In this document: positions 22,972 through 62,940 of the stretch, one piece after another
Layout of the letters: the number at the start of each line of letters is the position of its first letter
How positions within the stretch are numbered: position 1 is the stretch's first letter
DNA from: Octopus sinensis
Lineage: Eukaryota
Direction of reading: 5' to 3'
Length of the DNA stretch: 64,000 nucleotides
NCBI RefSeq assembly: GCF_006345805.1
Contig: NC_043001.1
Span: 99,634,001 to 99,698,000, forward strand
Notes under the pieces: generated by a model
Database searches by the model: none
The model's input: the letters and a program-made list of their open reading frames with translations, nothing else
Told to the model about the DNA's origin: nothing
Position numbers and translations under genes: made by a program

Positions 22972-24352
22972 ATCATCTTCATCATCATCGTTTAACGTCC
23001 GCTTTCCATGCTGGCATGGGTCGGACAATTTGACCGAGGACTGGCAAACCAGATGGCTGCACCAGGGTCCAATCTTGATCTGGCAGAATTTCTACAGCTG
23101 GATGCTCTTCCTAATGCCAACCACTCCGAGAGTGTAGTGGGTGCTTTTATGTGCCACCGGCATGGGGGCCTGTCAGGCAGTACTGGCAACGACCTCACTC
23201 AAATCTTTTTACACATGCCCCTGGCACAGGTACCAGTAAGGCGATACTGGTACAGATCATGCCCTCAAGTGGTGCCTTTCACGTGCCACCAGCACGGAAG
23301 CCAGTTAGCTGCTCTGGCACGATCACGCTCGGATGGTGCTCTTAGCACCGTACTAGCATGGGGCTCAAGTGCCAGTAAGGCGATGCTGGTAATGATCACA
23401 CTCAAATGGCGCCTTTTATGTACCACTGGCACAGAAACTGGTTAGTCACTCTGTCAACAATCACACTCGTATGGTGCTTTTTTTCACCCCGCTAGCACGA
23501 ATGCCAATCATCGATTTTGATTTTGATTTTGATTTTTGCTTTCACTCGCCTCAACAGGTCTTCGCAAGCAGTGTTCAATGAAGGGAAGGTACGCATAAGT
23601 GGGCTGGTTATGCCCCTGGCATAGGCCACGAGGTTATGGTCACATTTGGCTTCCCGGGTCTTCACAATCACAGCATATTTCCAAAAGTCTCGGTCAGTAG
23701 TCATTTCCTTGGTGAGGCCTAAAGTTCAAAGGTCGTGCTTCACCACTTCATCCTGCCCAGGCTATTCTTTTTCTAGCAGCTACACTTTCAGCACATCCTC
23801 CCCTCGCTACTGACTTGGTCACCAAGGTAACGGAAGCTATCAACTACTTCTAGTTTTTCTCTCTGGAATGTGGTGGAAGTTGTTCACTGCGCATTTTCAG
23901 TGTTTATTGCTCCTGAGCATCTGGCACATACAAAAACTATCTTCCCAGTTAGCCTTCCTTTGATATTACTGCACCTCTTATGTGTCCATAGATTACACTG
24001 GGTACATCTTATAGAGTTTCTACTTATGCCTCTACTACAGATCGAGCAGGCCATCTACCTGAAGGGATTTGTGGTTTGTTTGCCTTCCTACTTACTAAGA
24101 CTTTGGTTTTAGTTAGGTTGACTCTAAGGCCCTTCAATTCTAATCCTTGTTTCCATACTTGAAACTTCTCTTCTAGTTCTGATAGTGACTCAGCAATTAG
24201 AGCAAGGTCGTCAGCATAGAGGAGCTCCCAGGGGCATCCTGTCTTGAATTCCTCTGTTATTGCTTGGCGGGCTATGATAAATAGGAGGGGGCTGAGGACT
24301 GAACCTTGGTAGACCCCTACCTCTACCCTGAATTCTTCAGTGTACTCGTTCA
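22972..24352 (-). mobile_element. RTE LINE, 5'-truncated with an internal deletion, multi-module 3' UTR
   Basis: ORF 24024-24392 contains GVYQGSVLSPLLFII...LLYADDLALI; deletion junction near 23757; tail CATCATCATCGTTTAACGTCC at ~22975. Confidence 0.85.
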
Positions 24353-26334: not shown

Positions 26335-27312
26335 TTGAATGCCCGTAGTTTATGCAACAAGGTGCATCTTTTTGTCTCCTACGTCAAAAGTATCAACCCA
26401 GATTTCATCACAGTCACGGAAACATGGGCACACTCTGCACTCTGTGATGGAGTTTTCAGCATAACCGGCTACAACCTGTTCCGCAAAGACCGCATTAATC
26501 GCCGTGGAGTGGGTGTGATGATTTATGTTCGATCAAATCTATCGGCAATCCCCTGTGATGATTTGAACCAATCTCAGCAGGAAGTATTTTTCTGCAATAT
26601 ACACATGACCATGTCAACACTTCTGCTCGGAGTCGTTTACCGTCCTCCAAATTATCGCCAAGACGCACAGCTTTTTGATATCCTCAGAGCTGCTGCCATG
26701 AAAACAGCCACATATGTGTATATTGCGGGCGACTTCAATTTCCCTGAGATTGACTGGGAGGCCTTCCGTTGGCCGCAAAGTGCAGACGATTTCCTTGAAC
26801 TGGTGCTGAATTCAAATTGGTCCCAAGTTGTTACCTCCCCCACAAGGGGTAACAACACTTTGGATCTGCTACTTACCGCTTCTCCTGAAACAATCATTAG
26901 TGTCACTACCGAAGAAACTTTAGGTGACTCTGATCATTCCATGATCATGGCCGACTTGTCTCTGATTGGTTGTAATAAAAAACACAACCATCTTCAGACT
27001 GCCTGCTTTGACTGGAATAAAGCAAACTGGAGCTCTTATTGTACTGAGCTGCAACGCCCAAACTGGCGCGAATTTTATGCCTCTGGAGATGTGGACACTA
27101 TACTCCAGAACATTCTGAATTCAATATGGGCAGCATGTGCAGCATCAGTACCACGCAAGCACAAAAAACATCCAGTAGTGCAATTTGGGAGACTGCAGCA
27201 GTCCGACTTGCCAGGAAAGAACGCTGTAATGCTGAACAAGAATACAAATTGCACAAATCAGAGAGCAACAGGAAAAAGCGCAATAGGTCAGCCAACCACC
27301 TCAAGCAGGTGA
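26335..27312 (+). pseudogene. APE-type endonuclease domain of the CR1-group LINE (frameshifted)
   Basis: The reading frame shifts in the A6 run near 27163; a second shift, apparently a short deletion, at ~27365 separates it from the RT frame. Confidence 0.85.
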
Positions 27313-27516
27313 CAAAAAAGGCAGTGCTTGAATTTGAACAACGCATTGTAGCTAACCCTGACAGTTGGTCCCCTTCGCAATCCCCACACAGGACAGATTA
27401 CTGGCAATCCCGAAGAATGTGCAGAAATCATTGCTGGATGCTATGCCGGCATCTTTACTGTCGAAGACCAAAATGTTCCATCTTCATCACCACTGACATC
27501 GGACTCTAAATCTACT

Positions 27517-29043
27517 ATGCAATTTACACCAGCAATGTTGCAACGCCACCTTAAGAATAAACGCAATTATGCCTCTCCTGGTCTCGATGGTGTTACATAC
27601 CTACTTCTCAAACGCGGTGGGTACTTTCTTCTAAGCCAAAGCCAACTTTCTTTATTCTTCCAATTCTGTCTTGACAATGGTGTTACTCCAGAACAGTGGA
27701 AAACTGCCAGTGTCATCCCTCTGTTCAAAAAAGGCGACCGCACATCGCCTGTCAACTATCGCCCCGTCAGTCTTACTAGCTGCATCGCCAAACTGATGGA
27801 ATCCTGTATCAGAGAAGCCCTTTGGATCTTCTGGAAGTCTCACAGCCTCATCCAGCCGTCACAATTCGGATTTATTCCTAACTCCAGCTGCTGTAATCAA
27901 CTCATCGAGTTTCTTGAGGACGTTACCCAAATCACTGATCGCAGATCGTGGGTAGATGTTGTTTACCTGGACTTTGCTAAGGCTTTTAACTCTGTGCCAC
28001 ACAAAAGACTTATGGTGAAGCTTTCTGCGTTGGGTGTAAGAGACGAACTCTATAACTGGTTGAAGTCCTTTATTTTCAGCCGAAAAGAGGTTGTCACAGT
28101 TCTAGGACAGCACTCTTCGCCCTATGAGATGACATCTGGTGTACCACAGGGATCTGTTCTTGGCCCCCTTTTATTTGTTGCATATGTTAATGACATAGGT
28201 GCCAACTTAATGAATGCCACAGTGCTGAAATATGCAGATGACATCAAGCTGTACCTCGAAATAAAGAGGTCAAATCCTGTACACTATAGATCTCTATTGC
28301 AAGCAGACCTGGACACAATGCAGCAGTGGATCATGGACTGGCAACTCAAGCTGGCTGTGGACAAATGTACCACCATGCATTTTGGGAGGAGAAACCCAGC
28401 GTCCACCTACTCCCTCCACAACACTAGTCTCAAAAAGTCTTCATGTGAACGTGACCTGGGTGTTATTGTCGACAGTGATTTGTGTTGGACAAAACACATC
28501 GCTAAAATTGTCAAGAAGGCTGAGGGTGTCTTGGCATCACTCACCAAATCCTTTGTGAGCCGCTCTCCGGCTATCTATCTGCGGCTCTATATAGCTATGG
28601 TAAGACCTCACCTGGAATTTGCATCACCGGTCTGGAACCCCTATCTTGCCCAGGATATCAATCGTCTGGAAGCTGTTCAGCGACGTGCAACCAAAAGAAT
28701 ACCCTCCATCAGGCATTTGCCATATCCTGAACGCCTTACTTCCCTGGGCATGGACACATTGAAACTCCGACGTCTGGCAGCTGACTTGGCAGACACCCAT
28801 AAAATTATCAACCATCGTACAAACAATAACTCTGAGTACCTTTTCAAACTCCACCCATCTAACACCCGTGGACATATTTACAAAGTAAGAAAACAGCACA
28901 GCTCCCATGACTTCAGGAAACATTTTTTCACACTGAGAGTTGCTGAAGCATGGAACAAACTGCCGGCATCAGTTGTTAGTTGTCGGAGCACTGCATCCTT
29001 CAAAACTTCCATGCTTTCTGAGATTCGCCAACACTACACCTGA
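27517..29043 (+). CDS. Reverse transcriptase domain of the CR1-group LINE ORF2 (508-aa open segment)
   Basis: Uninterrupted ORF with all non-LTR RT motifs; it is part of a broken ORF2, not a host gene. Confidence 0.88.
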   Translation: MQFTPAMLQRHLKNKRNYASPGLDGVTYLLLKRGGYFLLSQSQLSLFFQFCLDNGVTPEQWKTASVIPLFKKGDRTSPVNYRPVSLTSCIAKLMESCIREALWIFWKSHSLIQPSQFGFIPNSSCCNQLIEFLEDVTQITDRRSWVDVVYLDFAKAFNSVPHKRLMVKLSALGVRDELYNWLKSFIFSRKEVVTVLGQHSSPYEMTSGVPQGSVLGPLLFVAYVNDIGANLMNATVLKYADDIKLYLEIKRSNPVHYRSLLQADLDTMQQWIMDWQLKLAVDKCTTMHFGRRNPASTYSLHNTSLKKSSCERDLGVIVDSDLCWTKHIAKIVKKAEGVLASLTKSFVSRSPAIYLRLYIAMVRPHLEFASPVWNPYLAQDINRLEAVQRRATKRIPSIRHLPYPERLTSLGMDTLKLRRLAADLADTHKIINHRTNNNSEYLFKLHPSNTRGHIYKVRKQHSSHDFRKHFFTLRVAEAWNKLPASVVSCRSTASFKTSMLSEIRQHYT

Positions 29044-29589: not shown

Positions 29590-29998
29590 AGAAAATCTGG
29601 TAAAATTGGCAGAGACGGTGAATGTAGGAGAAACGGTGATGAAAGTGTGAGTGGCGGGCAGAAGCCCTTACTGCTATAAATGTCACCAAAAAGGGCCACA
29701 TTAGAGCGGACTGCCCTCAAAACACAAGCAAGCCAGGAGAAAGCCGAGAATGAGAAGATGGTGGAAGATAATGATGAAACAGACGAGGAAAAAGTATGGA
29801 GTGTGGCTGGAAGGAGAAAACAGAGGAAGAAGAAGAAGGACAGTCAAAGTGAGCCCCAACCCGTACCCACCCCACCCATACCTTCACAGCCCCACCCTCC
29901 CGCTGCAGACACCAAACCCACCCATTCCCCACCGACACAAAAACAGAAAAAAGAAGTGCAAACACACACAAATTCACAAAACTCCCCTGCCTTGTGTT
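29590..29998 (+). mobile_element. Zinc-knuckle ORF1 relic of a non-LTR retrotransposon
   Basis: Removing one A from the A5 run at ~29688 gives VAGRSPYCYKCHQKGHIRADCP (CX2CX4HX4C), followed by a basic WSVAGRRKQRKKKK segment. Confidence 0.55.
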
Positions 29999-30236
29999 TG
30001 TTGTTGTTATATATATATAATGTATTGAGTATTAAAGGAAGTAGTGAGTACTTAGTATGAAAGATTAAGAAAATGAGAGAGACTGAAAAAACGTGTTAAC
30101 GATACGAGATATTTTATTAGACTGCCGTTGTTGTACAAGGTATTTGTTGTGGCGGGAAACTTATTGAATGTCCTTGTATCAAGGGAGACAATGGGCAACG
30201 TTGATTGTTCATGTTTGTTGTGATGATTACATAACA
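29999..30236 (-). repeat. 3' LTR (238 bp)
   Basis: Starts TGTTATGTAATC and ends AACAACA on -; differs from the 5' LTR by 2 substitutions and 2 fewer AT units. Confidence 0.95.
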
Positions 30237-30250
30237 TCTTCCTTTTTTTT
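30237..30250 (-). promoter_or_regulatory. Polypurine tract of the Gypsy element
   Basis: AAAAAAAAGGAAGA immediately precedes the TG of the 3' LTR on -. Confidence 0.85.
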
Positions 30251-31279
30251 ATTATCATCATCTGTATCTACAGGGAATAATTATTCGTCGTCCACTTTTT
30301 GTGGTTTTATTATTTTGTAGTGTTGAATTCTGTAGTTGTGCTGTTTTTGTTTTTTCATGCGTGTTTGTTGACTTTGGAAATATATTTTCATAATCTAATT
30401 CTTCTGTTATGCGAACGTGTTCGTTTGTTTTAAGAATATGTTGTCTATTTCGTTTGACTGTATTACCTTCCTCTGTTATTACTAAGTATGAACGAGGTTG
30501 CTCTAGTTTTTTTAATTATTTTGCCCCTTCTAAACCAATTGTTGTTAAACTTAATTCTAACCGTGTCGTGTGGTTTTAACTCTTGGAGTTCTGTTGTAAT
30601 GTTTGATTTCTTCTTTTCGTGAGGCCTGATACCAATTTTGTCGTGTAGTAAGTTTGGGAGATTTGTTCGCAATATTCTATTCATTATTTGATTTGCAGGG
30701 GATGGTGCACCATTTTGTAATTTAGTCGTGCGTAATGCTAAGAGCGCTAACTGAGGTTCTTCGCCACTCTTGAATGCCTTTTTTAGCGTCTTTTTTATTG
30801 TCTGTACATTTCTCTCAACCATGCCATTCGCTTGATGATAATGCGGGCTTGTCTTCGTGTGATGAAAATGCCAATTTTTTGCAATTTTTTGAATTCAGCC
30901 GAATTGAATTCTGGACCGTTGTCACTTACAACTGTTTGCGGAATTCCGAATTTAGCAAAAGTTTCTTTTAATTTTTGATTACGGTTTTTGACTGGCAATC
31001 ATTTATTTCGTGTAGATCAAAAAATCTTGTTGTATAGTCAATAATTGTGACATACGAATTTCCAGACAGGTGAAATACGTCTGTACCCACTTTGGTCCAT
31101 GGTGTAGTAGGTATTTCATGATTTATTAGTGGTTCGGCTGATTGTTGGTTTTTGTAGTCGATGCAGTATGAGCATGTGTTAATCATGTCTTTGATTTGAG
31201 CGTTAATGCCAGGCCAGTATATACATTCCTTCGCTCTCTCTATGCATTTTTCGATACCCATGTGTCCGGTATGTATTTC
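30250..31279 (-). pseudogene. Gypsy integrase (frameshifted, separated from RT/RH by the hAT)
   Basis: HTGHMGIEKC...YWPG...CSYC zinc domain, catalytic segments VGTDVF, VSDNGPEF and NGMVERNVQTIK, C-terminal TKSGRRIIIPCRY; shifts at ~30975, ~30885 and ~30510. Confidence 0.9.
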
Positions 31280-31287
31280 CTGTAGAG

Positions 31288-33662
31288 CAGTGATTCCCAA
31301 GGTGGGGCGTACGCCCCACTGGTGGGGCCTGAGAAAATTCAGGTGGGGCGCGGGGCATAGACGTGGGCTGTGAAAATATTTGTACATGACGAGCGGTCAT
31401 CGCGGGCACAACCTTAGATTCCGTCTTTCCTTTGAAGCCTCCACATCGGAAACTCTCGCACCCCAGCGAGACAAAGAAGATCCCGCACTGAGCAATAAAC
31501 TTACTATTCAGATAAGCCAATCAATTGCCTCAATTAGTTTGCCTCAATTAGTCTTTTGTTAGCCCTATTGAAAATGAGCAAACCAAACAAGAAGAAGACT
31601 CGTCAATACGCGGTGGAGTTTTTGAAGTTTGGATTCATTCCTGATGAGCATGATGAGCGTAAACCGTTTTGCTTATTATGTAATCAGACGATGAGCAATG
31701 AGTCAATGAAGGCAGGTAGGCTGGAAGCGCACTTAAAGGTAAGACATCCTAATAATTCTAATTTAGATTTGGAATACTTCAAATCATTGAAAGAAAAATT
31801 TAAAAACCGAACAAAACTCACTTCACTATTTCATGCAAAACAAGCGCCTCATACTCGTGCCCTTGAAGCCAGCTACGAAATCTCCTTGCTTATAGCAAAA
31901 CATGGAAAGAATCACACTATTGGAGAGCAACTGATTAAACCTGCTATCTCAATATTCTTAAAAACTGTATTACAAAAAGATGATGGAGATATCAGGACTA
32001 TGCCACTCAGTAATAACACTGTCTCGAACAGAATAGATGAAATGGGGCAAGATGTTGAAAGCCAGCTCATTGAGAAATTAAAATTGCGTAAGTTTTCATT
32101 ACAAATGGACGAATCCACAATCCGGGACAGTGAGGCTCTGTTATTGACTTATGTGAGGTATATTGACCACGAGGAGTTTCAGGAAGAGATGCTGTTCTGC
32201 GAATCGTTTGAAACCACCACAACTGCAAATGATATTTACATCAAAATCAAACATTATTTGGATGCAAACAAAATACCAAAGGAAAACTTACTGGCATGTG
32301 CGGCAGACGGTGCACCTGCCATGATGGGCAAGAATACGGGATGCTTAAAAATGATGAAGGATGAAAATCCAAACATGTTGACTGTCCATTGTGTAATACA
32401 CCGAGAAAACTTGGTTGCCAAGAAATTGTCCCCTGTTCTTAACAAGATTCTTCAAAGTGTGATCAAGTGTGTCAACAGCATTAAAAGAAATTCTAAATCT
32501 GAACGTCTTTTTAAGCAGTTTTGTATAAATCAAAGTGCCGAACATGTTCGATTATTGCTTCATACAGAAGTAAGATGGCTATCAAGTGGAAACTGCTTAA
32601 AGAGGTTCATGGAATTATTTGATCAGATTAACGACTTTCTTAGTGATAAATGTGAAATGAAATTGCTGTCAACAACGGATGGAAAAGCATTTGTCAGTTA
32701 TTTGACAGACATATTTGAGAAACTTGGAAACTTGAATAAACAACTTCAAGGTGCAAACATGACACTTATTGATGCAAAAGCAAAGATTTTTGGATTTATT
32801 ACAGCTCTCGAATTATGGAAAAAGAAATTTTCCAAAAGAAATTTCAGTGAACTTTACTGGTTGAGTAAATGTGAAATAACGAATGATGCTGGCATTGTAA
32901 TTATTGATCATTTAAATATCTTGATAAAGGATTTCAATGACAGATTTTGCGATTTAAAGGCAATGAATTTTCCTTCTTGGTTAACTCAACCGCTTCTGAT
33001 TAACGTTTCTGATGCTACAATCCAATACCAAGAAGAGTTATCAGAATTACAACATGATGAATCAGTGAAGACTTTGTTTAAATTGAAAGGTACAAAGATG
33101 TGGCTATATGACGAGGTTGAAAGAAAATATCCTAAAATTTCTACATCAGCGAGAGAGCTACTGATTCCTTTCCCTTCGTCTTATTTGGTCGAATGTGGTT
33201 TTAGTGCAGTTGATAATTTGCTCGAAGCCAAGAGAAACCGGCTTGAGATTACAAAACGTGGCGATTTACGACTGAAATTAACAAAGTTGTCTCCTCAAAT
33301 TAAAAACTTGTGCTGTATGCATCAGGCACAGGGTTCTCACTAAATTAGTCGAGCTGACCGTCAAATAATTGAACTGAAAAAACGTGTTTCTTTATTCTTT
33401 ATAAATTGACATTTTTTAAAAACATGAGAAATCGTAATAATTTTATCGATTTATTGGGTGTTATGCACTTTCAGTGCCTGTTGTTTCAATTCTCAAACTA
33501 TTTTTTTGTATTTTGAATACAATTTTTTAATTTTTGATTTTTTTTCAATTGTAAGTAGGCCCACATGTACTTGTAAATGTGAGTGGACATGGGAAAAGGT
33601 GGGGCGTAAAAACTTTTGCTATGAAAAAGTGGGGCGCCGGGAAAAAAGGTTGGGAAACACTG
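31288..33662 (+). mobile_element. hAT transposon, Buster family, full length, apparently autonomous
   Basis: TIRs CAGTGATTCCCAA / CAGTGTTTCCCAA (12 of 13 match); perfect 8-bp TSD CTGTAGAG (31280-31287, 33663-33670) with central TA; repeated subterminal GTGGGGC motifs; 2375 bp. Confidence 0.97.
31574..33343 (+). CDS. Buster-type hAT transposase, 589 aa, intact ORF
   Basis: BED finger CLLC...HLKVRH; QMDEST (D1), ADGA (D2), HCVIHRE (CxxH), EVRWLS, SSYLVECGFS (E); C-terminal HQAQGSH typical of ZBED5/SCAND3/Buster-like proteins; no stops or shifts. Confidence 0.95.
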   Translation: MSKPNKKKTRQYAVEFLKFGFIPDEHDERKPFCLLCNQTMSNESMKAGRLEAHLKVRHPNNSNLDLEYFKSLKEKFKNRTKLTSLFHAKQAPHTRALEASYEISLLIAKHGKNHTIGEQLIKPAISIFLKTVLQKDDGDIRTMPLSNNTVSNRIDEMGQDVESQLIEKLKLRKFSLQMDESTIRDSEALLLTYVRYIDHEEFQEEMLFCESFETTTTANDIYIKIKHYLDANKIPKENLLACAADGAPAMMGKNTGCLKMMKDENPNMLTVHCVIHRENLVAKKLSPVLNKILQSVIKCVNSIKRNSKSERLFKQFCINQSAEHVRLLLHTEVRWLSSGNCLKRFMELFDQINDFLSDKCEMKLLSTTDGKAFVSYLTDIFEKLGNLNKQLQGANMTLIDAKAKIFGFITALELWKKKFSKRNFSELYWLSKCEITNDAGIVIIDHLNILIKDFNDRFCDLKAMNFPSWLTQPLLINVSDATIQYQEELSELQHDESVKTLFKLKGTKMWLYDEVERKYPKISTSARELLIPFPSSYLVECGFSAVDNLLEAKRNRLEITKRGDLRLKLTKLSPQIKNLCCMHQAQGSH

Positions 33663-34020
33663 CTGTAGAGCTTCTCTACGTAATGACTTAGGTACAATTA
33701 TTCTTGAACCTTTTAGAACGAGACCATTGACGATTGATATTTCATCACGAACGGAGACGAATGGTTTTATGTTTATTGGTATTTTGTCTTTTGGGGGCCA
33801 TTCTGTTCTTGTATATGTGATGAGTGTCTGTAGTGACGGGTCGTCTGCAGTGGCTTCTTTATACTCGTTTAATTTAGTGTCGGTTATGGGGTAATTTTTT
33901 ATTACTGCATGTATGTGCGATTTCATATCTTCGTCTGATACTTCTGGAGTATTTTGCTCAAGGTATGCACGTGATAGGGTATCTGCAACAATTGATTCTT
34001 TACCAGATATGTGGTTTAGG

Positions 34021-36582
34021 TCAAAACCATATGTTAGTAGAAATCTTTGGATTCTGGGGGGTGGGGGGGCATTTAGTGATCGATTTTTTGAATATTTGCT
34101 TCAACGGTTTATGGTCATTTTCGATTCTGAAATGAGTTCCGTATATAAACTGATTAAATTTCTTGCATGCGAAAACTATACTGAGAGCTTCGCTCTCTAT
34201 CGGACAGTAGTTTTGTTCCGCTTGAGTTGTTGCACGAAATACAAACGAAACAGGTAGCCATCTTTCGTTGTGTTTCTGCTCAAGTATCGCTCCGAGCCCA
34301 TGCTTACTAGCATCTGTAGTTATTTTTATTGGTAGATCTGGATTATAAAATTGTAGCACTGGTTTTCTGGTAATCATTTCTTTTAGCTTTTTTATTGCTT
34401 CGATTTGTGGTTTGTCGAATGACCATAACGTGTCACTCTGTAGAAGCTGGCGTAATGGTGCTGTAACTTCGGAGTAATTTGATAAAAATTTACATAGGTA
34501 ATTTGTCATACCTAGGAATCTTTGTAATTCTTTTTTACTTGTTGGCAGTGTCATGTGAATGATTGCTTGTACTTTGGTTGGATCTTGTTTTATCCCTTCG
34601 CTGGTTGATAGATGCCCAAGGTACGTGATTTGTGATTCATAGAAGATACACTTTGATTTATTTAACTTTAATCCGTGCTTTCGGATTCGATCGAAAACTT
34701 GTTGTAGTCTATTTGTGTGTTCTTCTAAAGTGCTGGACCAGATTATGATGTCATCCTGTGAATTTCTTGCTCCTTCTATGCCCTCTATTATTTTTGCAAT
34801 TTCTTTTTGGAAAACTTCACTGGCGCTGTGAATTCCAAAGGGTAGTCGTGTGAAGCGATACCTTCCAAAAGGTGTGTTGAACGTTAACAGATGGGAGCTT
34901 TCTTTGTCAACTGGAATTTGCCAGTATCCATTAGATGCATCGAGTTTCGAAAAATATTTAGGGTTATGCATTTGTGCAAAAATGTTCTCCGCTGTAGGGA
35001 GTTTGAAATGTTGCCTTTTTATGGCTTTGTTTAGATTCTTGGGGTCTAAACAGAGTCGGAGTTTTCCGTTGGCTTTTTCAACGATGACTAGGGAATTTAC
35101 CCAGTCTGTAGGTTCACTAACAGGTTTTATGATACCTAATTCTGTCATTCTTTTTAATTCTTTGTTGAGTTTTTCTTTTATAGAAAAAGGAACCGATCTT
35201 GGTGGATGAATTACAGGAGTTATTTGTGGACCCACTGTGATATGATGTGTTATTGACAAAGTGCCGATTTCTCCGAAACAGTCTTCATATTTTTCTATTA
35301 TGTCGTTTGTGTTCGACGAGTTTATTTTTGAAGTTCTCTGAATTAGGTTCAGATCTTTAGCTGCCTTTGCATCTATAACTGCGTGCGAGTTTGTTTTTGC
35401 AACAATGAATTTTATTTGTTTTGATAATTCTTTGTATTTAGTGACTGCTGTGCATTTTCCTAGCACTTTTATAGCTGTGTTATTGTAAGCTGATAATCGA
35501 GTTGAGGTTTTTTGCAGTTGTGGTTTTGGAATTATATTTTTATATTCTCTGAATGGCAGTACGGTTACGTCTGCTCCAGTATCAATTTTGAATGTTACAT
35601 TCGAGTTGTTCACTTTTAGTTCGATCGTCCAAATGTCTTTTGGAGTCTTGAACTTTTCGATTTTGTGCACGCGGGAATTATTTGAAGTGATCATTTCGAG
35701 TGCATGTGTATCGTCATCTGTTTCATCGTCGGTATGTATCTCTACTTTATGTACAAATTTTCTTGATTTGCACATTTTTGCATAGTGTCCTTGTTTCTTG
35801 CATTTTTCACATGTCTTGTGAAATGCTGGGCATTTATTTCTTTTGTGATTATAACCACAATAGTGACAGTTAGTGACGTAGTGTTGACTTGGCGCTTGAA
35901 ACTTCGCGGGCTTTCTGTCACTTCCGCCTTGTTCGTTTTGATGTCTGGATTGCATATGGCGAGTTATTTGAGTTTTGGCGCCTTTTCTGTCGTGTTGACT
36001 ATATACCCTCGAGATTTCGTTATCTCTTGTTTCGGATGTGGCATTTAGCATCCTTGATTGGAGTCGTGTTTGCTCTGCACTCTGACCTGCTTGAATTGTT
36101 TTTTGTAAGTCTAAATTTGGTTCTCTCAATAATCTTTCTCTTAATCTCATGTCTCTGATTCCACATATCAGAATATCTCTGGTGAGACTGTCTGTGAGGT
36201 TGCCGAATTCGCACTGTTGTGCCTTTTGGCGCAACTCTACCACGTACTCATCGAATTTTTGATGTTCCGCTTGTCCACATGTGAAGAATTTGTGTCTCAG
36301 GAAAGTTATGTTTTTCCTGGGTTCACAATATGCATCGAATTTTTCGATTACTGTTTGAAGGTTCATTTCTTCGTCGGGTGAATCGAAATCCAGAGTGGAA
36401 TGGATGTCTCGGCCTTTGGAACCGATGCAAGTTAAAAACATTGACGTTTTTACTTTGTCTGGCTTCATGTCACTTTCTGTTGCTATCAAAAAGAGATTGA
36501 ATTCTTTTTTCCACTTTTTCCATGCTGCGGCTAGATTTTCCTGATTAAAGTCTAGGTCTTTTGGATGCGGTAAATTTTCCAT
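34021..36582 (-). CDS. Gypsy Gag-Pol polyprotein (gag, two zinc knuckles, protease, RT, RNase H), ending in a frameshift
   Basis: ATG at 36582 (MENLPHPKDLDF); CHYCGYNH...C and CEKCKKQGHYAKMC; FKIDTGAD; LDASNGYWQ; SQDDII; TTDASKHGLGA; NDHKPL. A shift in the G6-T-G7 run at ~34056-34069 is followed by an in-frame continuation to LRREALQ at the hAT junction. Confidence 0.93.
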   Translation of the reverse strand: MENLPHPKDLDFNQENLAAAWKKWKKEFNLFLIATESDMKPDKVKTSMFLTCIGSKGRDIHSTLDFDSPDEEMNLQTVIEKFDAYCEPRKNITFLRHKFFTCGQAEHQKFDEYVVELRQKAQQCEFGNLTDSLTRDILICGIRDMRLRERLLREPNLDLQKTIQAGQSAEQTRLQSRMLNATSETRDNEISRVYSQHDRKGAKTQITRHMQSRHQNEQGGSDRKPAKFQAPSQHYVTNCHYCGYNHKRNKCPAFHKTCEKCKKQGHYAKMCKSRKFVHKVEIHTDDETDDDTHALEMITSNNSRVHKIEKFKTPKDIWTIELKVNNSNVTFKIDTGADVTVLPFREYKNIIPKPQLQKTSTRLSAYNNTAIKVLGKCTAVTKYKELSKQIKFIVAKTNSHAVIDAKAAKDLNLIQRTSKINSSNTNDIIEKYEDCFGEIGTLSITHHITVGPQITPVIHPPRSVPFSIKEKLNKELKRMTELGIIKPVSEPTDWVNSLVIVEKANGKLRLCLDPKNLNKAIKRQHFKLPTAENIFAQMHNPKYFSKLDASNGYWQIPVDKESSHLLTFNTPFGRYRFTRLPFGIHSASEVFQKEIAKIIEGIEGARNSQDDIIIWSSTLEEHTNRLQQVFDRIRKHGLKLNKSKCIFYESQITYLGHLSTSEGIKQDPTKVQAIIHMTLPTSKKELQRFLGMTNYLCKFLSNYSEVTAPLRQLLQSDTLWSFDKPQIEAIKKLKEMITRKPVLQFYNPDLPIKITTDASKHGLGAILEQKHNERWLPVSFVFRATTQAEQNYCPIESEALSIVFACKKFNQFIYGTHFRIENDHKPLKQIFKKSITKCPPTPQNPKISTNIWF

Positions 36583-36649
36583 TTCGTCTTTGAAGTATGA
36601 TTTCAACTTCTTTTTTCTTTTGGTTTCTGTATTTTGGGTTCTTTTAGTA

Positions 36650-36660: not shown

Positions 36661-36902
36661 TGTTGTTGTTATATATATATATATAATGTATTGAGTATTA
36701 AAGGAAGTAGTGAGTACTTAGTATGAAAGATTAAGAAAATGAGAGAGACTGAAAAAACGTGTTAACGATACGAGATACTTTATTAGACTGCCGTTGTTGT
36801 ACAAGGTATTTGTTGTGGCGGGAAACTTACTGAATGTCCTTGTATCAAGGGAGACAATGGGCAACGTTGATTGTTCATGTTTGTTGTGATGATTACATAA
36901 CA
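36661..36902 (-). repeat. 5' LTR (242 bp)
   Basis: Near-identical partner of 29999-30236. Confidence 0.95.
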
Positions 36903-37637
36903 CCTAGTGTTCCGTCTTAGTTTATCAGGTATATTGTGTTGGTAGTTGTTTCTTCCGTAGTGCATTTGTTGTTTGTTAGGTTTGTATGGTTGGTTCCTAG
37001 GGTGGATGTTTGGTGGTAGAGTTTTAGTTTGGTTATGTGGATTGTATTTCATAGAATTGTATGTTGTAGCCCTTTGGTTCGTGAAATGGTGTGGTGGGCC
37101 CCTGTAAGTGTTTTGGGGTTGGTGTAGGTAGTGTGGGGTGTGTTTTAAATGTATTTTTCTGGTGTAGAGTGTGTTTGGATTTCTTGGTGGTTGTTCCGTT
37201 CTGTTGGTATTTGGTTTTGTTTTAGTTAATTTTATGAAGGGGTTGTTGGATATGTGTTCATTTTTGAAGTTGGTTTCATAATCCAAGAACCAGATGGCGC
37301 TCTTTTCCCATCGTTGGAGGGACTTAAGTTCCTCTTTTTCACATTCTTCTTTCCATAGTGTTAGTAATGTTTCAGTATTGATGTCGTCTATTAGTTTGAT
37401 GACTTCTTCGTTGATTTCCTCATCTATGGTTTTTACTTTTTCTTCATTCGTCTTAGCTCTCAGCTTAAGTAGTTCTATTTCCATCTTCATTTTTTCTAAT
37501 GACATTTTTTCTCTAAGTCTTCTTTGTTCTTCTGGTTCTTCCAAGATGGGTTTAATTTGTAATTTGCGGGGTATGATTAGGGGTGTTGAGTCTAGCCACT
37601 TTTGGTAAATCTCTGCTTTATTCTGATTTTGTATCAT
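36903..37637 (-). other. Open 245-codon coiled-coil plus N/H/P/Q-rich ORF, probably a retroelement ORF1 relic cut by the LTR
   Basis: Stop-free from 37637 into the LTR; E/K heptad-rich region LEEPEEQRRLREKMSLEKMKMEIELLKLR...WKEECEKEELKSLQRWEK followed by a low-complexity tail; family not confidently recognised. Confidence 0.4.
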
Positions 37638-37701
37638 TTTCCAAAAAGCGAATTTTCTGTTTCGCTGTAGTGTTCTCCATATATATATATATATACATAC
37701 A

Positions 37702-39319
37702 CAGTTGTGGCCAAAATGTTCAGAACAGCATTGTTTTCGTCAGAAAAGTAGATATAATTTTTTATCAAAATTGTTTTATATTCTATAATTTTCACAGACA
37801 ATAAATACGATATTATTTGTTATTGCCTGAGATTTTGGTGTAATTTGAGAGGATAATACAAAAGTTATGGATGATTTAGTGATTTACTGCAAAACCCATG
37901 GCGGCCAAAATGATCAGAACAGTTGCTTTTACTTCGTGTTTTAGTATATTTAACCGGCGAACTCTAATGTTTTGAATTTGTTTACGTGACGGTTTGTTTA
38001 CTAAACATTAGTAAGAATATTTGCAGCGTACTTTGTTAATATAATGCCACTTACTCAGTTACCAATTCGTCAGCAGATTATTAAGCTTCGAAGGAAGGAT
38101 AATTTAAGTATTGGATCTATTGCAAAGATTGTTAACAAGTCAAAAAGTGTTGTACACGGTATTCTTAAGGTCTACGATGATTGTGGTTCGTGTGAAGCAA
38201 GAAAGTTTACAGGTAGGCCAAGAAAAACGACCAAGAGAGAAGATCGTGCTATGGTAAAGTTGGTTAAAAGGACAGATTTAAAACTGCTGCTGCTGTTTCT
38301 CGGAAAATGAGCATTGTATTGAAGAAAACTTTATCTAGAAAAACTGTGTCTCGTCGTTTAGTTGAACATGACCTACAAGCAAGAGCACCTGCAGTGAAGC
38401 CACTGATCAGCTCCAATTATAAAAAGTGTCGTCTTACCTTTGCAACCGAACATGTGTTGTGGTCTCAAGAAAAATGGCAAACGGTGCATTTCAGTGATGA
38501 ATCTAAGTTAATGCTATTTGGCTCAGATGGGAAAAGTAGAAAAGTAGGTGAAAAATTGCTGCCTAAATGCCTTAAGACTAGTGTTAAATTCGGTGGAGGA
38601 AGTGTCATGGTTTGGGGAATGATATCTGGAGATGGTGTGGGCCCTTTGGTGCGATTACATGGAAAGGTAAATGCAGGAGTTTATAAACAATTTGTAAAAG
38701 ATCATGTCTTGCTTATGCTGAGAAATTCAACTAAGCGACCACCCATATTCATGCAGGACAATGCCCCATGTCACAAGGCTAAGGTGGTCATGAACTTCCT
38801 CAAGGCTGAAAAGGTTATTGTTATGGATTGGCCAGCTCAAAGCCCAGATCTCAATCCTATTGAAAATGTGTGGAATATTCTAGGAGAACGTTCGAAAGCC
38901 TGAAATCCTAAAACAACTGAGCAATTATGGAATGCCCTTCAGGAAGAATGGAATAAGGTCACCCAGCAAGAAATTGAAAATTTAATTTCCTCATGCAGTC
39001 GAAGATGTCAGAGTGTGATTGAAGCTAAAGGGCTTCACACTAAATATTAAATAATTCCAGTATTCTCTGTCATTTTTGATTATTTTGTTATTTTTTCAAC
39101 CGTTCTGATCATTTTGGCCGCCATGGGTTTGCAGTAAATCCCTAAATCATCCATAACTTTTGTATTATCCTCTCAAATTACACCAAAATCTCAGACAATA
39201 ACAATTAATATTGTATTTATTGTCTGTGAAAATTATAGAATATAAAACAACTTTGATAAAAAATTATATCTACTTTTCTGACGAAAACAATGCCGTTCTG
39301 AACATTTTGGCCGCAACTG
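37702..39319 (+). mobile_element. Tc1-family transposon with long IR/DR terminal repeats
   Basis: TIRs of ~219 bp (37702-37920, 39102-39319) starting CAGTTG, each with outer and inner direct repeat GYGGCCAAAATGWTCAGAAC; TA on the right, CA (mutated) on the left. Confidence 0.95.
38044..39050 (+). pseudogene. Tc1 DD34E transposase, inactivated
   Basis: Paired-like HTH with GRPRKTT, FSDESK, QDNAPCH, SPDLNPIENVW; frameshift near 38270 and premature TGA at 38901; natural end HTKY-stop at 39050. Confidence 0.9.
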
Positions 39320-39672
39320 TATATATATATTTTATTATTTATTTATTTTTTATTTATTTAAAAATAAATAAATATAACTATCAAAAAGAATAAAAAATTT
39401 AATATAAGATAAAGAGTAAAACCACAACGATCGTTTCAATGCCCATAATCTAATTTGAATAACAATAATTTAAATTCAATTAATAATTCGAATTATGGTT
39501 ATAGTCAATCTTCAGGTTTAAATTATTGTAATTCGAATTAGATTATGGGCATGAAACGATCGTAGTGGTTTTACTCTTTATCTTATATTAAACTTTTAAT
39601 TCTTTTTGATAGTTATATTTATTAAAAAAAAATAATAATAAAAATAAAAATAATAAAATATATGTATATATA
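39320..39672. repeat. Fold-back inverted repeat, ~155-bp arms, ~40-nt spacer
   Basis: ...TATAAGATAAAGAGTAAAACCACAACGATCGTTTCAATGCCCATAATCTAATT... is mirrored by ...AATTAGATTATGGGCATGAAACGATCGTAGTGGTTTTACTCTTTATCTTATA...; a few mismatches. Confidence 0.85.
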
Positions 39673-39935: not shown

Positions 39936-42273
39936 CAATTAGAAGCATGAAGACAGGGAAAGCCCCAGGCCCATCAGGAATTACTGCAGTGATGCTCAAA
40001 ATATCCGGCAGTGTCGGCTATAGCCTAGTCACCCGTATAGTTAACCAGGTGATACATGAAGGAGTCATACCCAATGACTGATGTAGCAGCATAATAGTCA
40101 ACTGCTACAAAGGTAAAGGTGATGCCCTAGATATAAATAATTACAGAGGTATCAAGCTGTTAGATCAGGTAATGAAGGTTACAGAGAGGGTCATAGCCCA
40201 ACTGATTAGGGAGAGAGTCAACTTGGATGAGATGCAGTTTGGTTTCGTGCCAGGGAAAAGCACCACTGATGCCATATTTCTGGTGAGACAGCTGCAGGAG
40301 AAATACTTAGCCAAAGATAAGCCCCTGTACCTGGCTTTCGTTGACATGGAGAAAGCCTTCGACAGGGTCCCCCGATCCCTTATCTGGTGGTCAATGAGGA
40401 AACTGGGGATAGATGAATGGCTGGTGAGAGCTGTGCAAGCCATGTACAGGGATGCTGTAAGTAAGGTAAGGGTTAGCAACGTGTACACTGAAGAATTCAA
40501 GGCAGAGGTTGGGGTCCACCAGGGTTCAGTTCTCAGCCCCCTCCTATTTATCATAAGCGTCCAGGCAATAACGGAGGAATCCAAGACAGGATGCCTCTGG
40601 GAGCTCCTCTATGCTGACGACCTTGCTCTAATTGCTGATTCACTATCAGAACTGGAGGAGAAGTTTCAGGTGTGGAAACAAGGATTAGAATCAAAGGGCC
40701 TTAGAGTCAACCTAGCTAAAACCAAAGTCCTAATAAGTAGGAAGGTAGACAAACCACAAATGCCTTCAGGTAGATGGCTCTGCTCGATCTGTAGAAAAAG
40801 TGTAGGTAGAAACTCTATGAGATGTACCCAGTGTAAGCTATGGACACATAAGAGGTGCAGCAATGTCAAAGGAAGGCTAACTGGGAAGATAGTTTTTGTA
40901 TGTGGTAGATGATCAGGAGCAATAAACACTGAAAATCTGCAGAAAACAACTTTCCAGGGGGAAAAACTAGAAGTAGTTGATAGCTTCCATTATCTAGGGG
41001 ACCAAGTCAGTAGCGGGGGTGGGTGTGCTGAAAGTGTAACTGCTAGAGTAAGAATAGCCTGGGCAAAGTTCAGGGAGCTCTTACCTCTGCTGGTGACTAA
41101 AGGCCTCTCGCTCAGAGTAAAAGGCAGACTGTATGATGCATGTGTACGAACAGCCGTGCTACATGGCAGTGAAACATGGGCCATGACTGCTGAGGACATG
41201 CGTAAGCTCATGAGGAATGAAGCCAGTATGATCCGATGGATGTGTAATGTCAGTGTACATACTTGACAGAGTGTAAGTACCTTGAGAGAAATGTTGGACC
41301 TAAGAAGCATCAGCTGTGGTGTGCAAGAGAGACGATTGCGCTGGTATGGTCATGTGACGAGAATGGATGAAGATAGGTGTGTGAAAAAGTGCCAAAACCT
41401 AGCAGTTGAGGGAACCCGTGGAAGAGGTAGACTCAGGAAAACCTGGGACGAGGTGGAGAAGCACGACCTTCAAATTTTAGGCCTCACTGAGGCAATGACT
41501 AGTGACCGAGACCTTTGGAAATATGCTCAGCATGAGAAGACCCGGCAGGACAAGTGAGTCCATCCCAGCCAGCCCACTTATGCATGCCTTTCCTCCCTTG
41601 GACACATGAAGACCTGTTGAGGCAAGCAAAGTCGAAATCGAACCTCATCCGATGACAGTTACCCATGTCAACCTCCCTTCATTGGACACTAAACTCTGCT
41701 TGCGAAGACCTATCGGGGCAAGTGAAATCGGAATAGAAATTGAACCAATCCTATGACTGGCACCCAGCAGTTGCCAGGGCCGCTGGACTGGCTCTTGTGC
41801 AGGTGGCAAGTAAAGAAACACCGTTTCAACCTTGTGCTTGAGGAGATCCATTGAGTCAAGTACACCAACATCAAAACTCATTGGAAATTGTAGTTGTGAT
41901 CCCTGTGCTGGTGGCACGTAAAAAGCACTATCTGAACGTGGCCGATGCCAGCGCCGCCTAGACTGGCTTCCGTGCTGGTGGCACATAAAAAGCATCATCT
42001 GAACGTGGCCGATGCCAGCGCCGCCTTGACTGGCTTCCATGCTGGTGGCGCATAAAAAGCACCAATCCGATCGTGGCTGTTGCCAGCCTTACCTGGCATG
42101 TAAAAAGCACCCACTACACTCACAGAGTGGTTGGTGTTAGGAAGGGCATCCAGCTGTAGAAACACTGCCAGATCAGCCTGGAACCTTGGGCAGCCTTCTG
42201 GCTTCCCAGATCCCCGGTCGAACCGTCCAACCCATGCTAGCATGGAGAACGGACGTTAAACGATGATGATGAT
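39932..42273 (+). mobile_element. RTE LINE, 5'-truncated, RT largely open, 3' UTR with ~65-bp tandem modules
   Basis: ORF 40172-40912 QFGFVPGKSTTDAIF...DMEKAFDRVP...GVHQGSVLSPLLF...YADDL; tail TTAAACGATGATGATGATG at ~42257-42273. Confidence 0.9.
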
Positions 42274-45156: not shown

Positions 45157-46230
45157 ATTACTGAAACAATAAATCTGGTAAAATATAAATAATGTACATT
45201 TCAATGGACATGTTGGACAATGTGCAGGGGGCTTCCATGGCATACATAGAGGCTATGGTTTTGGTTCCCACAATGAGGAGGGAACCAGACTGCTGCAGTT
45301 CTGCGATGCAAATGATCTTATGGTTTGCAATACCAACTTCAGGAAACCCGCCCGTCACCTAGTCACCTATCGTTCTGGCAGACACACTAGCCAAATTGAC
45401 TATATCCTCACCAGAAAAAGGGAAAGAGGGCTGCTTATAAATGCCAAAACCTTCCCAGGCAAAGAATGTACCCCTCAACATAGATTAGTAGTTAGCAACT
45501 TCAGGATCAGGGCTGAATGGATGCCCAGAAGAAGACCAGCCTGGAGGAGAAGGGTCTGGAAGCTTAAAGATCCTGTAAATGGGCAGAGATTTAGAGACGT
45601 ATTACTCGAAGCTTTCGATGAAATAGAAGGGGATATAGCATCACATAATGTGGAAGACAACTGGAGGTTTCTACGGAACAACCTGCTGAGAGCCACTGAC
45701 CAGATCTGTGGATGGTGCAAAGTCCCCTCTCGACCCAAGGTAACGTGGTGGTGGAACAATGTGGTTGACAGGGCTATTAGACAAAAGAAACAGTTTTGGA
45801 AGGACTGGAAGAACAGAAGTAGCAGGGAATTGTATCAGACTGCCAGAATGGAAGCTAGGAGACAGGTTTATTTAACCAGAGGGGAAGCAGATAAGAAAAA
45901 ATTTGCCAATGTTCTGCGCTGTGAGGACCAAAGACTTGAAGTATTTTGTGAGAGAGAATCGGGATGTCGTAGGAGAGAAATGTGTCCGTATGGATGATGG
46001 TTGACTTGCACTAAATGAGACTGCAAAGAGAGAGGTTTGGAGACGCCACTATGAAAGGTTGTTTAATAAAGAGAATGAATGGGAGAAAGAGAGTCTGCCA
46101 AATGTCAACCCAACAGAGGGACCAGCTATCCGAATTGACAGTACCTTGGTAGTTAAAGCAATCAAGAGTATGAAGGCAGGGAAAGCCCCGCTCATCAGGA
46201 ATCACTGCAGAGATGCTCAAAATATCTGGG
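45157..46230 (+). mobile_element. RTE LINE fragment (endonuclease end and linker)
   Basis: NTNFRKPARHLVTY...SQIDYIL...QHRLVV...WWWNNVV; truncated at the start of RT. Confidence 0.8.

Positions 46231-62077: not shown

Positions 62078-62940
<863 letters not shown>

What the first reader, a model, noticed from the sequence alone, without database searches (positions are those of the whole stretch)
31280..33670. Intact, very recent Buster-family hAT nested in a near-identical-LTR retrotransposon: candidate active cephalopod DNA transposon
Seen: uninterrupted 589-aa transposase with BED finger, DDE, CxxH and RW motifs; 13-bp TIRs; a perfect nnnTAnnn TSD; an 18-bp perfect subterminal palindrome GTGGGGCGTACGCCCCAC (31302-31319) with further GTGGGGC copies at both ends. 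It most likely post-dates its host, whose LTRs differ at only 2 substitutions. Established: Buster hATs (TcBuster, SPIN) prefer TA-centred 8-bp targets, are prone to horizontal transfer, and are used as gene-delivery tools. Inference: this is the only DNA transposon in the window that could still be mobile, and a possible native transgenesis vector or horizontal-transfer marker.
Basis: partly seen in the sequence, partly recalled or inferred. Interest (0 to 1): 0.72.

Follow-up and report, generated by a model that had tools for sequence, protein, structure and literature searches.

The report
Intact young Buster hAT transposon, octopus
This is a complete, undamaged copy of a cut-and-paste "jumping gene" (a Buster-type hAT transposon) in the East Asian common octopus genome; near-identical copies elsewhere in two octopus species and a close relative in a snail-like mollusc show it moved recently and has crossed species lines, which is a solid but fairly ordinary find.

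Summary
Window 31288-33662 is a 2,375-bp hAT element. It has a perfect 8-bp duplication (CTGTAGAG), 13-bp inverted ends (12/13 match), an 18-bp palindrome, clustered GTGGGGC motifs and an uninterrupted 589-aa transposase.

The window is Octopus sinensis chromosome CM016863.1. Five more copies at unrelated sites in O. sinensis and O. vulgaris are 99.6-99.9% identical. Each complete copy has its own 8-bp duplication. Every difference among the six copies is private to one copy, and the window copy equals their consensus.

Removing the insert restores the integrase reading frame of the host Ty3-like retrotransposon. The predicted protein fold matches only the Hermes hAT transposase. Sequence relatives and TA-centred targets (11 of 12) place it in the Buster group.

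A 4.2-kb relative has six copies at least 99.9% identical to each other in a gastropod-like genome. It shares 83.5% coding identity and an identical first 32 bp with the octopus element, although a neighbouring host gene is only 50% identical to octopus. That points to horizontal transfer.

Verdict: a new member of a known kind. It is structurally competent and recently mobile. Present-day activity is untested. Recently active hAT families in O. vulgaris and Buster transfers across phyla are already published.

The parts
31288..33662 (+). Complete autonomous hAT (Buster-group) transposon, 2,375 bp
   Evidence: Bounded by inverted ends and a perfect 8-bp duplication. Five other copies at 99.6-99.9% identity begin and/or end at exactly these bases.
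31280..31287 (.). Left copy of the target-site duplication, CTGTAGAG
   Evidence: Identical to 33663-33670. TA sits at positions 4-5.
33663..33670 (.). Right copy of the target-site duplication, CTGTAGAG
31288..31300 (+). Left terminal inverted repeat, CAGTGATTCCCAA
   Evidence: The same 13-mer is found in relatives L003 and L014-L019.
33650..33662 (-). Right terminal inverted repeat, CAGTGTTTCCCAA on the minus strand; 12/13 match to the left end
   Evidence: The A/T asymmetry at position 6 is conserved in L003 and the ERZ25071447 element.
31302..31319 (.). 18-bp perfect palindrome GTGGGGCGTACGCCCCAC, made of two abutting inverted copies of the subterminal motif; inferred transposase binding site
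   Evidence: It is 100% conserved in L003 and the ERZ25071447 element, although the rest of the untranslated region cannot be aligned.
31322..31349 (+). Two further GTGGGGC subterminal motifs, at 31322-31328 and 31343-31349
33599..33635 (+). Two GTGGGGC(G) subterminal motifs at the right end, at 33599-33605 and 33629-33635. Read from the right terminus they are GCCCCAC at positions 28-34 and 58-64.
   Evidence: The same positions are occupied in L003 and L020; in the ERZ element the outer site is a perfect GCCCCAC and the inner site is degenerate.
31574..33343 (+). Transposase gene: 589 aa, no intron, intact. Zinc finger C33/C36/H53/H58; catalytic D179, D245, E540; C273-x2-H276; R334-W335.
29998..30238 (-). 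3' LTR of the host Ty3-like retrotransposon (the element reads on the minus strand)
   Evidence: 241-bp match to 36663-36904 with 2-3 substitutions and one 1-bp indel.
36663..36904 (-). 5' LTR of the host retrotransposon
34021..36606 (-). Host gag-protease-RT-RNase H reading frame, 861 aa
   Evidence: Pfam RVT_1, RT_RNaseH and gag-asp_proteas.
30463..33926 (-). Host integrase region, split by the hAT between codons ...ALQ | EIH... of its HHCC zinc finger. It is also broken by frameshifts near 30970 and about 30860.

Best explanation
The feature is a complete autonomous DNA transposon of the hAT superfamily, Buster group, in Octopus sinensis.

Mechanism, inferred from the Hermes and TcBuster paradigm and not shown here: the 589-aa transposase binds the GTGGGGC/GCCCCAC motifs near both ends through its N-terminal CCHH (BED-like) finger. 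It pairs the CAGTG...CACTG termini and cuts the element out with its D179/D245/E540 RNase-H-like site. It reinserts into an 8-bp staggered cut, preferring C-T-n-T-A-G-A-S, and repair of the cut creates the 8-bp duplication.

Shown here: this copy landed in the integrase gene of an already resident Ty3-like retrotransposon. It has not diverged from the family consensus. Sister copies with their own duplications lie at unrelated sites in two octopus species, so the family transposed recently. At 3.6e-9 substitutions per site per year, this copy is under about 0.35 million years old and the other sampled copies are under about 1 million years old. The transposase lineage evolved under purifying selection (dN/dS 0.14-0.21 against relatives). 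A sister lineage sits in a gastropod-like genome, which implies horizontal transfer among marine molluscs.

The copy has everything a mobile element needs. Whether it jumps today is inference.
For: - Anatomy.
- Source genome.
- Other copies: L001 differs at 2 of 2,375 bases (duplication CTGTAGAC). L010 has 8 mismatches and 1 indel (ATGATAGC). L011 has TTCTAGAG, L013 has CTTTAGAC, and L012 is 5'-truncated.
- Star-like pattern: all variable sites are singletons and the window copy equals the consensus.
- Empty site: deleting the element and one duplication copy gives a continuous ...SLRREALQEIHTGHMGIEKC... This stretch is also uninterrupted in integrase homologues P0149-P0152, closest in P0150.
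- hAT fold: profile hit to Hermes at E=2e-4, aligning E540 with the Hermes SERTFS glutamate and RW with the Hermes RW. AlphaFold model with pLDDT 84; its top 12 PDB fold hits are all Hermes, E 6e-10 to 9e-8.
- Buster: Pfam PF27073 and PF27046 on homologues, and ZBED5/SCAND3/FAM200-like names. TA-centred targets in 11 of 12 sites. The nnnTAnnn consensus is from PMC3499496.
- Selection and transfer: dS 0.55 and dN/dS 0.21 against the ERZ25071447 element. That element has perfect duplications and lies 4.8 kb from a ZNF423 gene that is 65% identical to Haliotis and only 50% identical to Octopus.
- End motifs are conserved across four lineages.
Against: - No transcript, excision footprint or presence/absence polymorphism could be examined.
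- The orthologous O. vulgaris site could not be fetched.
- Copy sampling went through annotated proteins, so it is biased towards intact copies. Many members of the 34-protein cluster are truncated, at 272-558 aa.
- One of six octopus duplications (ATGATAGC) is not TA-centred.
- The local Pfam library did not recognise BED or hAT-dimerisation domains.
- No explicit tree with TcBuster, AeBuster or SPIN was built.
- Ages depend on a borrowed substitution rate.
- The organism behind ERZ25071447 is inferred from a single host gene.
Confidence: 0.85

Rival explanations
1. The copy looks intact but the family is no longer mobile. It may be silenced by small RNAs or chromatin, or may carry a subtle inactivating change. 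The near-identity would then only reflect a burst that ended within the last million years or so.
For: No evidence of current activity was obtainable. Sampled sister copies already carry deletions: 25 bp in L013, 20 bp in L011 and a 5' truncation in L012. Many cluster members are truncated.
Against: The window copy has zero differences from the consensus. All conserved catalytic, zinc-finger and terminal motifs are intact. At least four sampled copies keep full 589-aa reading frames.
Confidence: 0.3
2. It is a domesticated host gene of transposase origin, like ZBED5, SCAND3 or FAM200, and not a transposon. This is what the database names suggest.
For: Automatic names on the closest proteins read 'SCAN domain-containing protein 3-like' and 'ZBED5-like'.
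Against: It has inverted ends, subterminal repeats and a perfect 8-bp duplication. It is nested in a retrotransposon. It occurs at several unrelated loci, each with a different duplication.
Confidence: 0.02
3. The copies were spread by segmental duplication or assembly error, not by transposition.
For: None found.
Against: Similarity stops exactly at the termini. Flanks are unrelated and each copy has a different duplication. Copies occur in two independent assemblies.
Confidence: 0.01
4. The similarity to the element in ERZ25071447 reflects vertical inheritance or contamination, not horizontal transfer.
Against: - dS of 0.55 corresponds to tens of millions of years, not the more than 500 million years since gastropods and cephalopods split.
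- The element is integrated with perfect duplications in six contigs of up to 1 Mb. One copy lies 4.8 kb from a Haliotis-like ZNF423 gene.
- It differs from the octopus element by 16% in the coding region and by about 1.8 kb of extra sequence, so it is not octopus contamination.
Confidence: 0.05

Closest known systems
TcBuster / AeBuster1 / SPIN and the recently tested AnBuster, CrBuster and related elements (Buster family of hAT)
   Same: - Single intronless transposase reading frame of about 600 aa.
- Total length of about 2.4-3 kb.
- Inverted ends of 13-16 bp.
- 8-bp TA-centred duplications.
- Essential subterminal sequence beyond the inverted ends.
- Patchy, transfer-prone distribution.
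Sources: PMC12637253, PMC3499496. From memory only, SPIN and TcBuster ends also start CAGTG..TTC.CAACC.
   Different: - The host is a cephalopod.
- At 589 aa it is slightly shorter than the 597-677 aa range reported.
- The target preference appears more extended (CTnTAGAS, near-palindromic).
- The left end carries a conserved 18-bp perfect palindrome.
- Activity has not been tested.
- Placement relative to the reference elements was not tested by a tree.
Hermes transposase (Ac family of hAT; PDB 2BW3, 4D1Q, 8EDG)
   Same: The overall fold is the same: RNase-H-like catalytic core interrupted by an all-helical insertion, and a C-terminal region carrying the catalytic glutamate. The RW motif and an N-terminal zinc finger are also shared. 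From memory, Hermes also recognises short GTGGC-like subterminal repeats through its BED domain.
   Different: Only about 15-18% sequence identity. It belongs to a different family (Ac), whose target consensus is nTnnnnAn rather than TA-centred.
Human ZBED5, SCAND3 (ZBED9), FAM200A/B/C and GTF2IRD2 (Buster-derived host genes)
   Same: They share the same Pfam families, and automatic names are transferred from them. The Buster origin of ZBED5 is stated in PMC10027918.
   Different: Those are single-copy, immobile host genes without ends or duplications. This is a multi-copy element with both.
The 21 'recently active' hAT families annotated in Octopus vulgaris (Bonar et al. 2026, PMC13282606)
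   Same: Same genus. The criterion there is 2% or less divergence from consensus and 90% or more of full length, which the O. vulgaris copies L001, L010 and L011 would meet.
   Different: That paper gives counts only. It gives no element anatomy, no Buster assignment and no cross-species or transfer analysis. Whether this family is among the 21 was not checkable.

Membership tests
hAT superfamily | 8-bp target-site duplication | tested here: met
   Perfect 8-bp duplications in the window, L001, L010, L011 and L013, and in five ERZ25071447 copies. Definition from PMC3942097.
hAT superfamily | Short terminal inverted repeats (10-25 bp) | tested here: met
   13 bp with a 12/13 match.
hAT superfamily | Transposase with a Hermes-like fold: DDE in an RNase-H-like core split by a helical insertion, RW motif, and a C-terminal region carrying the catalytic E | tested here: met
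   Profile hit to Hermes at E=2e-4 with the E and RW motifs aligned. The top 12 Foldseek hits are all Hermes, probability 1.0, TM 0.42-0.56. D179, D245 and W335 are invariant; E540 and R334 are at least 90% conserved.
hAT superfamily | N-terminal BED-type zinc finger | tested here: inconclusive
   C33-x2-C36-x16-H53-x4-H58 is invariant in 29 homologues, and a beta-beta-alpha fold is predicted. However, Pfam zf-BED was not hit; the only hit was a weak Spin-doc zinc finger at E=0.07.
Buster family of hAT | Target-site consensus nnnTAnnn | tested here: met
   TA at positions 4-5 in 5 of 6 octopus sites and 6 of 6 sites of the ERZ25071447 relative. The consensus is given in PMC3499496.
Buster family of hAT | Transposase sequence groups with Buster and Buster-derived proteins | tested here: met
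   Pfam FAM200-ZBED5_RNase-like and FAM200-GTF2IRD2-like on the exact protein. The closest named proteins are ZBED5/SCAND3/FAM200C/ZBED8-like.
Buster family of hAT | Placement inside the Buster clade in a tree with the TcBuster, AeBuster, SPIN, Ac and Tip references | not tested
Currently active autonomous transposon | Intact reading frame, both ends intact, and several near-identical copies at different sites | tested here: met
Currently active autonomous transposon | Insertion polymorphism, excision footprints, transcripts, or activity in an assay | not testable with these tools
   There was no access to population reads, RNA data or the orthologous O. vulgaris site.
Ty3-like LTR retrotransposon (the host element) | LTR pair flanking gag-protease-RT-RNase H-integrase | tested here: met
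   LTRs. RVT_1, RT_RNaseH and aspartyl protease. Integrase zinc finger (PF17921 on homologues) and core.
Ty3-like LTR retrotransposon (the host element) | Short target-site duplication flanking the LTRs | tested here: not met
   No matching 4-6 bp was seen at the inferred TG...CA boundaries. The boundaries are uncertain by 1-2 bp.

The most novel reading that the evidence does not exclude
The family entered, or swept through, both Octopus vulgaris and O. sinensis after they separated, through horizontal transfer or introgression from a pool of Buster elements circulating among marine molluscs.

Three copies sampled from each species trace back to one identical 2,375-bp master with no species-diagnostic site. 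The split is dated at about 2.5 million years (PMC10700109). At that date a neutral rate of 3.6e-9 per site per year (derived from PMC13282606) predicts about 1.8% divergence.

A sister lineage is multiplying in a gastropod-like genome.
Probability: 0.3. Interest if true: 0.6.

Novelty: new member of a known kind. Interest (0 to 1): 0.4.

Why it matters
It gives a concrete, fully delimited candidate for a native cut-and-paste vector in cephalopods: exact ends, subterminal motifs, target preference and an intact transposase. It is a well-resolved example of a young DNA transposon nested in a young retrotransposon. It adds a mollusc-to-mollusc (gastropod-like to octopus) case to the known horizontal spread of Buster elements. 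The identical master sequence in two octopus species is a testable hint of very recent cross-species movement. None of this changes how hAT elements are understood.

Tried and rejected
- The local Pfam scan of the transposase returned no hAT or BED family. The relevant families, PF27073 and PF27046, are newer than the local library.
- A single-sequence search against PDB found nothing. A 29-sequence profile was needed.
- I searched for near-identical uninterrupted copies of the host integrase, to serve as paralogous empty sites. Only relatives at 73-81% identity turned up. They do run uninterrupted through the junction.
- I tried to measure nuclear divergence between O. sinensis and O. vulgaris from the ZNF423 locus. 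Both gene ranges exceed 100 kb, so no DNA was returned.
- I tried to name the organisms behind ERZ25071447, ERZ27264081 and GCA_037975485.1 through literature and through shared repeats with octopus flanks. Neither gave anything. Only the ZNF423 neighbour helped.
- The extra upstream reading frame of the ERZ25071447 element has no Pfam hit. By eye it looks like a retroelement fragment. It was not pursued.
- PMC2579371 (the SPIN paper) is not held, so the resemblance of the ends to SPIN and TcBuster remains a recollection.
- I considered that CTGTAGA belongs to the element, because L001 has CTGTAGAC at both ends. This was rejected because L010, L011 and L013 have different duplications.
Full report
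**1. Observation**

The sequence at 31280-33670 is as described.
- An 8-bp direct repeat, CTGTAGAG, sits at 31280-31287 and 33663-33670. It brackets a 2,375-bp segment.
- The termini are CAGTGATTCCCAA on the left and, reverse-complemented, CAGTGTTTCCCAA on the right. That is a 12/13 match. These are the only exact matches to CAGTGWTTCCCAA in the 64-kb window.
- The 18-bp palindrome GTGGGGCGTACGCCCCAC lies at 31302-31319.
- GTGGGGC occurs 8 times in the window against 2.7 expected; none of 100 shuffles reached 8. Six of the eight lie within 62 bp of the left terminus or 64 bp of the right terminus.
- One reading frame, ATG 31574 to stop 33343, encodes 589 aa without interruption.

**2. Where the window comes from**

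The exact 589-aa protein is annotated in two assemblies.
- The O. sinensis locus (GCA_006345805.1, CM016863.1) is 100% identical to the window over 9.77 kb, so the window is Octopus sinensis.
- The second locus, O. vulgaris OX597822.1 (L001), shares only the element.

**3. It is a transposon insertion**

Other copies were recovered through the protein cluster, which has 34 members at 90% identity. Similarity to the window stops exactly at the termini in every copy.

| Copy | Species, record | Difference from window copy | Duplication |
|---|---|---|---|
| L001 | O. vulgaris OX597822.1 | 2 mismatches in 2,375 bp | CTGTAGAC |
| L010 | O. vulgaris OX597815.1 | 8 mismatches, 1 indel | ATGATAGC |
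| L011 | O. vulgaris OX597842.1 | 20-bp deletion near the right end | TTCTAGAG |
| L013 | O. sinensis CM016859.1 | 25-bp deletion that truncates the reading frame | CTTTAGAC |
| L012 | O. sinensis CM016861.1 | 5'-truncated at element position 580 | right flank ATCTAGAC |

Deleting the element plus one duplication copy restores a continuous host reading frame...IVPKSLRREALQEIHTGHMGIEKC.... The stretch across the junction also runs uninterrupted in integrase relatives from elsewhere; the closest, P0150, reads ...PKSLHREALQKIHTGHMGIEKC....

The host is a Ty3-like LTR retrotransposon on the minus strand.
- Its LTRs lie at about 29998-30238 and 36663-36904.
- An 861-aa frame carries protease, RT and RNase H.
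- The LTRs differ by two transitions, plus one substitution and a 1-bp indel at a (TA)n edge.

**4. What the protein is**

- The local Pfam library gave nothing. Precomputed annotation of the exact protein lists FAM200-ZBED5_RNase-like and FAM200-GTF2IRD2-like.
- In 29 homologues at 43-89% identity, C33, C36, H53, H58, D179, D245, C273, H276 and W335 are invariant. R334 and E540 are at least 90% conserved.
- A profile of these homologues reaches the Hermes transposase at E=2e-4. It aligns E540 with the Hermes catalytic glutamate and aligns the RW motifs.
- An AlphaFold model has mean pLDDT 84 and pTM 0.71. It shows a beta-beta-alpha finger at residues 21-57 and a beta-rich core at 174-272, followed by a long helical region.
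- The 12 best PDB fold matches are all Hermes, with E from 6e-10 to 9e-8. The next hit is a bacterial IS transposase at 8e-4.

This is a hAT transposase.

**5. Buster assignment**

The family is defined by transposase sequence and by TA-centred 8-bp targets (PMC3942097, PMC3499496).
- The closest named proteins are ZBED5/SCAND3/FAM200C/ZBED8-like. These names derive from human Buster-derived genes (PMC10027918).
- Five of six octopus targets and all six targets of the nearest related family have TA at positions 4-5.
- Pooled, the targets read C-T-n-T-A-G-A-S, a near-palindrome.
- Size, a single reading frame and short inverted ends fit the Buster elements shown to be active in human cells (PMC12637253).
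- I did not build a tree with TcBuster or SPIN.

**6. Age and activity**

- In an alignment of the six octopus copies, every variable site is a singleton, and the window copy equals the consensus at all of them.
- The O. vulgaris repeat paper equates a JC distance of 0.09 with 25 million years (PMC13282606). That gives 3.6e-9 substitutions per site per year.
- At that rate, zero changes in 2,375 bp gives an upper bound of about 0.35 million years for this copy.
- The other copies are 0.08-0.38% from the consensus, which is at most about 1 million years.
- The host LTRs (K of about 0.008-0.0125) date the host to about 1.2-1.7 million years. The nesting order and the dates agree.
- Four sampled copies keep the full reading frame. 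Sampling through proteins favours such copies.
- No other transposase reading frame of 220 aa or more exists in the window. The other large frames are LINE or RT fragments.
- Current mobility remains an inference.

**7. End architecture**

Related elements were recovered from three other sources. Outside the coding region their untranslated sequences barely align with the octopus element.

| Source | Coding nucleotide identity to the octopus element |
|---|---|
| L003 (metagenome contig) | about 90% |
| L014-L019 (ERZ25071447) | 83.5% |
| L020 (GCA_037975485.1) | 77% |

Despite this, some features are conserved.
- The first 32 bp, including the whole palindrome, are identical in the octopus element, L003 and the ERZ25071447 element.
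- At the right end, a GCCCCAC site lies at about 27-34 and another at about 57-64 from the terminus. Both are kept in the octopus element and L020. L003 keeps the inner site, with the outer one reduced to GCCCCA. The ERZ25071447 element keeps the outer site and has a degenerate inner one.
- At the left end, the same orientation sits at 26-32, with extra copies in the opposite orientation at 15, 35 and 56.

Conservation of this kind marks functional sites. By analogy with Hermes, I infer that they bind the zinc finger. This inference was not tested.

**8. Horizontal transfer**

- The ERZ25071447 element is 4,181 bp long. Six copies are at least 99.9% identical to each other. Five have perfect TA-centred duplications, on contigs of up to 1 Mb.
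- One copy lies 4.8 kb from a ZNF423 gene. The best matches of that gene are Haliotis (65%), Patella and Lottia (54%) and other gastropods and bivalves. Octopus reaches only 50%.
- The host is therefore a gastropod-like mollusc, yet its transposase is 78% identical in protein and 83.5% identical in DNA to the octopus one.
- dS is 0.55 and dN/dS is 0.21. That corresponds to tens of millions of years, not the more than 500 million years separating the classes.
- The next named relatives are a mantis shrimp, spiders, scorpions, a beetle, a lobster, a shark and a snake, at 62-68% protein identity, and no other named mollusc.
- This patchiness is typical of Buster elements (Guan et al. 2022, cited in PMC12637253).

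**9. An unresolved point**

- O. vulgaris and O. sinensis are said to have split 2.5 million years ago (PMC10700109). Even so, the three copies sampled from each species share one identical ancestor sequence.
- At the rate used above, about 1.8% divergence would be expected.
- Three explanations are possible: the rate or date is too high, the master was unusually conserved, or the family reached both species after the split.
- I could not calibrate this with orthologous DNA.

**10. Verdict**

The finding is real and correctly interpreted. It is a new member of a known kind. Recently active hAT families in O. vulgaris are already counted: 21 families and 153 insertions (PMC13282606). Buster transfers across phyla are established. 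The practical interest lies in a fully delimited candidate vector for cephalopods. There is also a possible very recent cross-species spread.

Noticed in passing
window 6400-10100: A large tandem array with a 56-bp period, at least 67 copies in register, 90-99% identical in the core.
   Followed up: no
window 26335-29043 (+): LINE-like endonuclease (Exo_endo_phos) and reverse-transcriptase reading frames. They end about 1 kb before the LTR element that hosts the hAT.
   Followed up: partly
window 23754-24350 / 40478-41065 and 22979-23148 / 42103-42272: Two nested pairs of inverted repeats (89% and 85% identity) bracket the LINE, the LTR element and the hAT. They may be two inverted copies of another repeat, or the long ends of a large element.
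   Followed up: no
window 37691-37925 / 39097-39330 and 39320-39668: A 235-bp inverted repeat pair at 95% identity, and an adjacent 350-bp self-complementary stretch.
   Followed up: no
window 30238-31060 and 33900-34080 (-): The host retrotransposon's pol is defective apart from the hAT insertion. The integrase core runs through three frames, shifting near 30970 and about 30860, and there is another shift between RNase H and integrase near 34030. No flanking duplication was seen at the LTR edges. Long-read indel errors in this assembly could account for some of these shifts.
   Followed up: partly
L014-L019 (ERZ25071447), element positions about 740-2065: The gastropod-like relative carries an extra 387-441-aa reading frame upstream of the transposase. 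It has no Pfam hit and by eye resembles a retroelement C-terminal fragment. All six copies mobilise it together with the transposase.
   Followed up: partly
L012 7190-7275 (O. sinensis CM016861.1): This 5'-truncated hAT copy starts at element position 580. It is directly preceded by a duplicated TTTTTTCTTCATCTAG and by most of the expected target sequence. This looks like an abortive repair or deletion product. A 41-kb gene model (P0003, 610 aa) fuses upstream exons to it.
   Followed up: no
L003 (ERZ27264081, 2.9-kb metagenome contig): A full-length relative with 89% protein identity whose two flanks (ATCTAGTT and CACTACGC) do not match, although both are TA-centred. This may be an assembly collapse of several copies.
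   Followed up: no
window 62105-62290: A short-period repeat that also occurs next to the O. vulgaris copy, at L001 1827-1914.
   Followed up: no
window 46195-46207 and 48650-48662 (-): Two identical 13-mers, CAGTGATTCCTGA, lie 2.4 kb apart on the same strand and resemble the hAT terminus with 2 mismatches. No GTGGGGC motif is nearby, so they probably belong to a different repeat.
   Followed up: no
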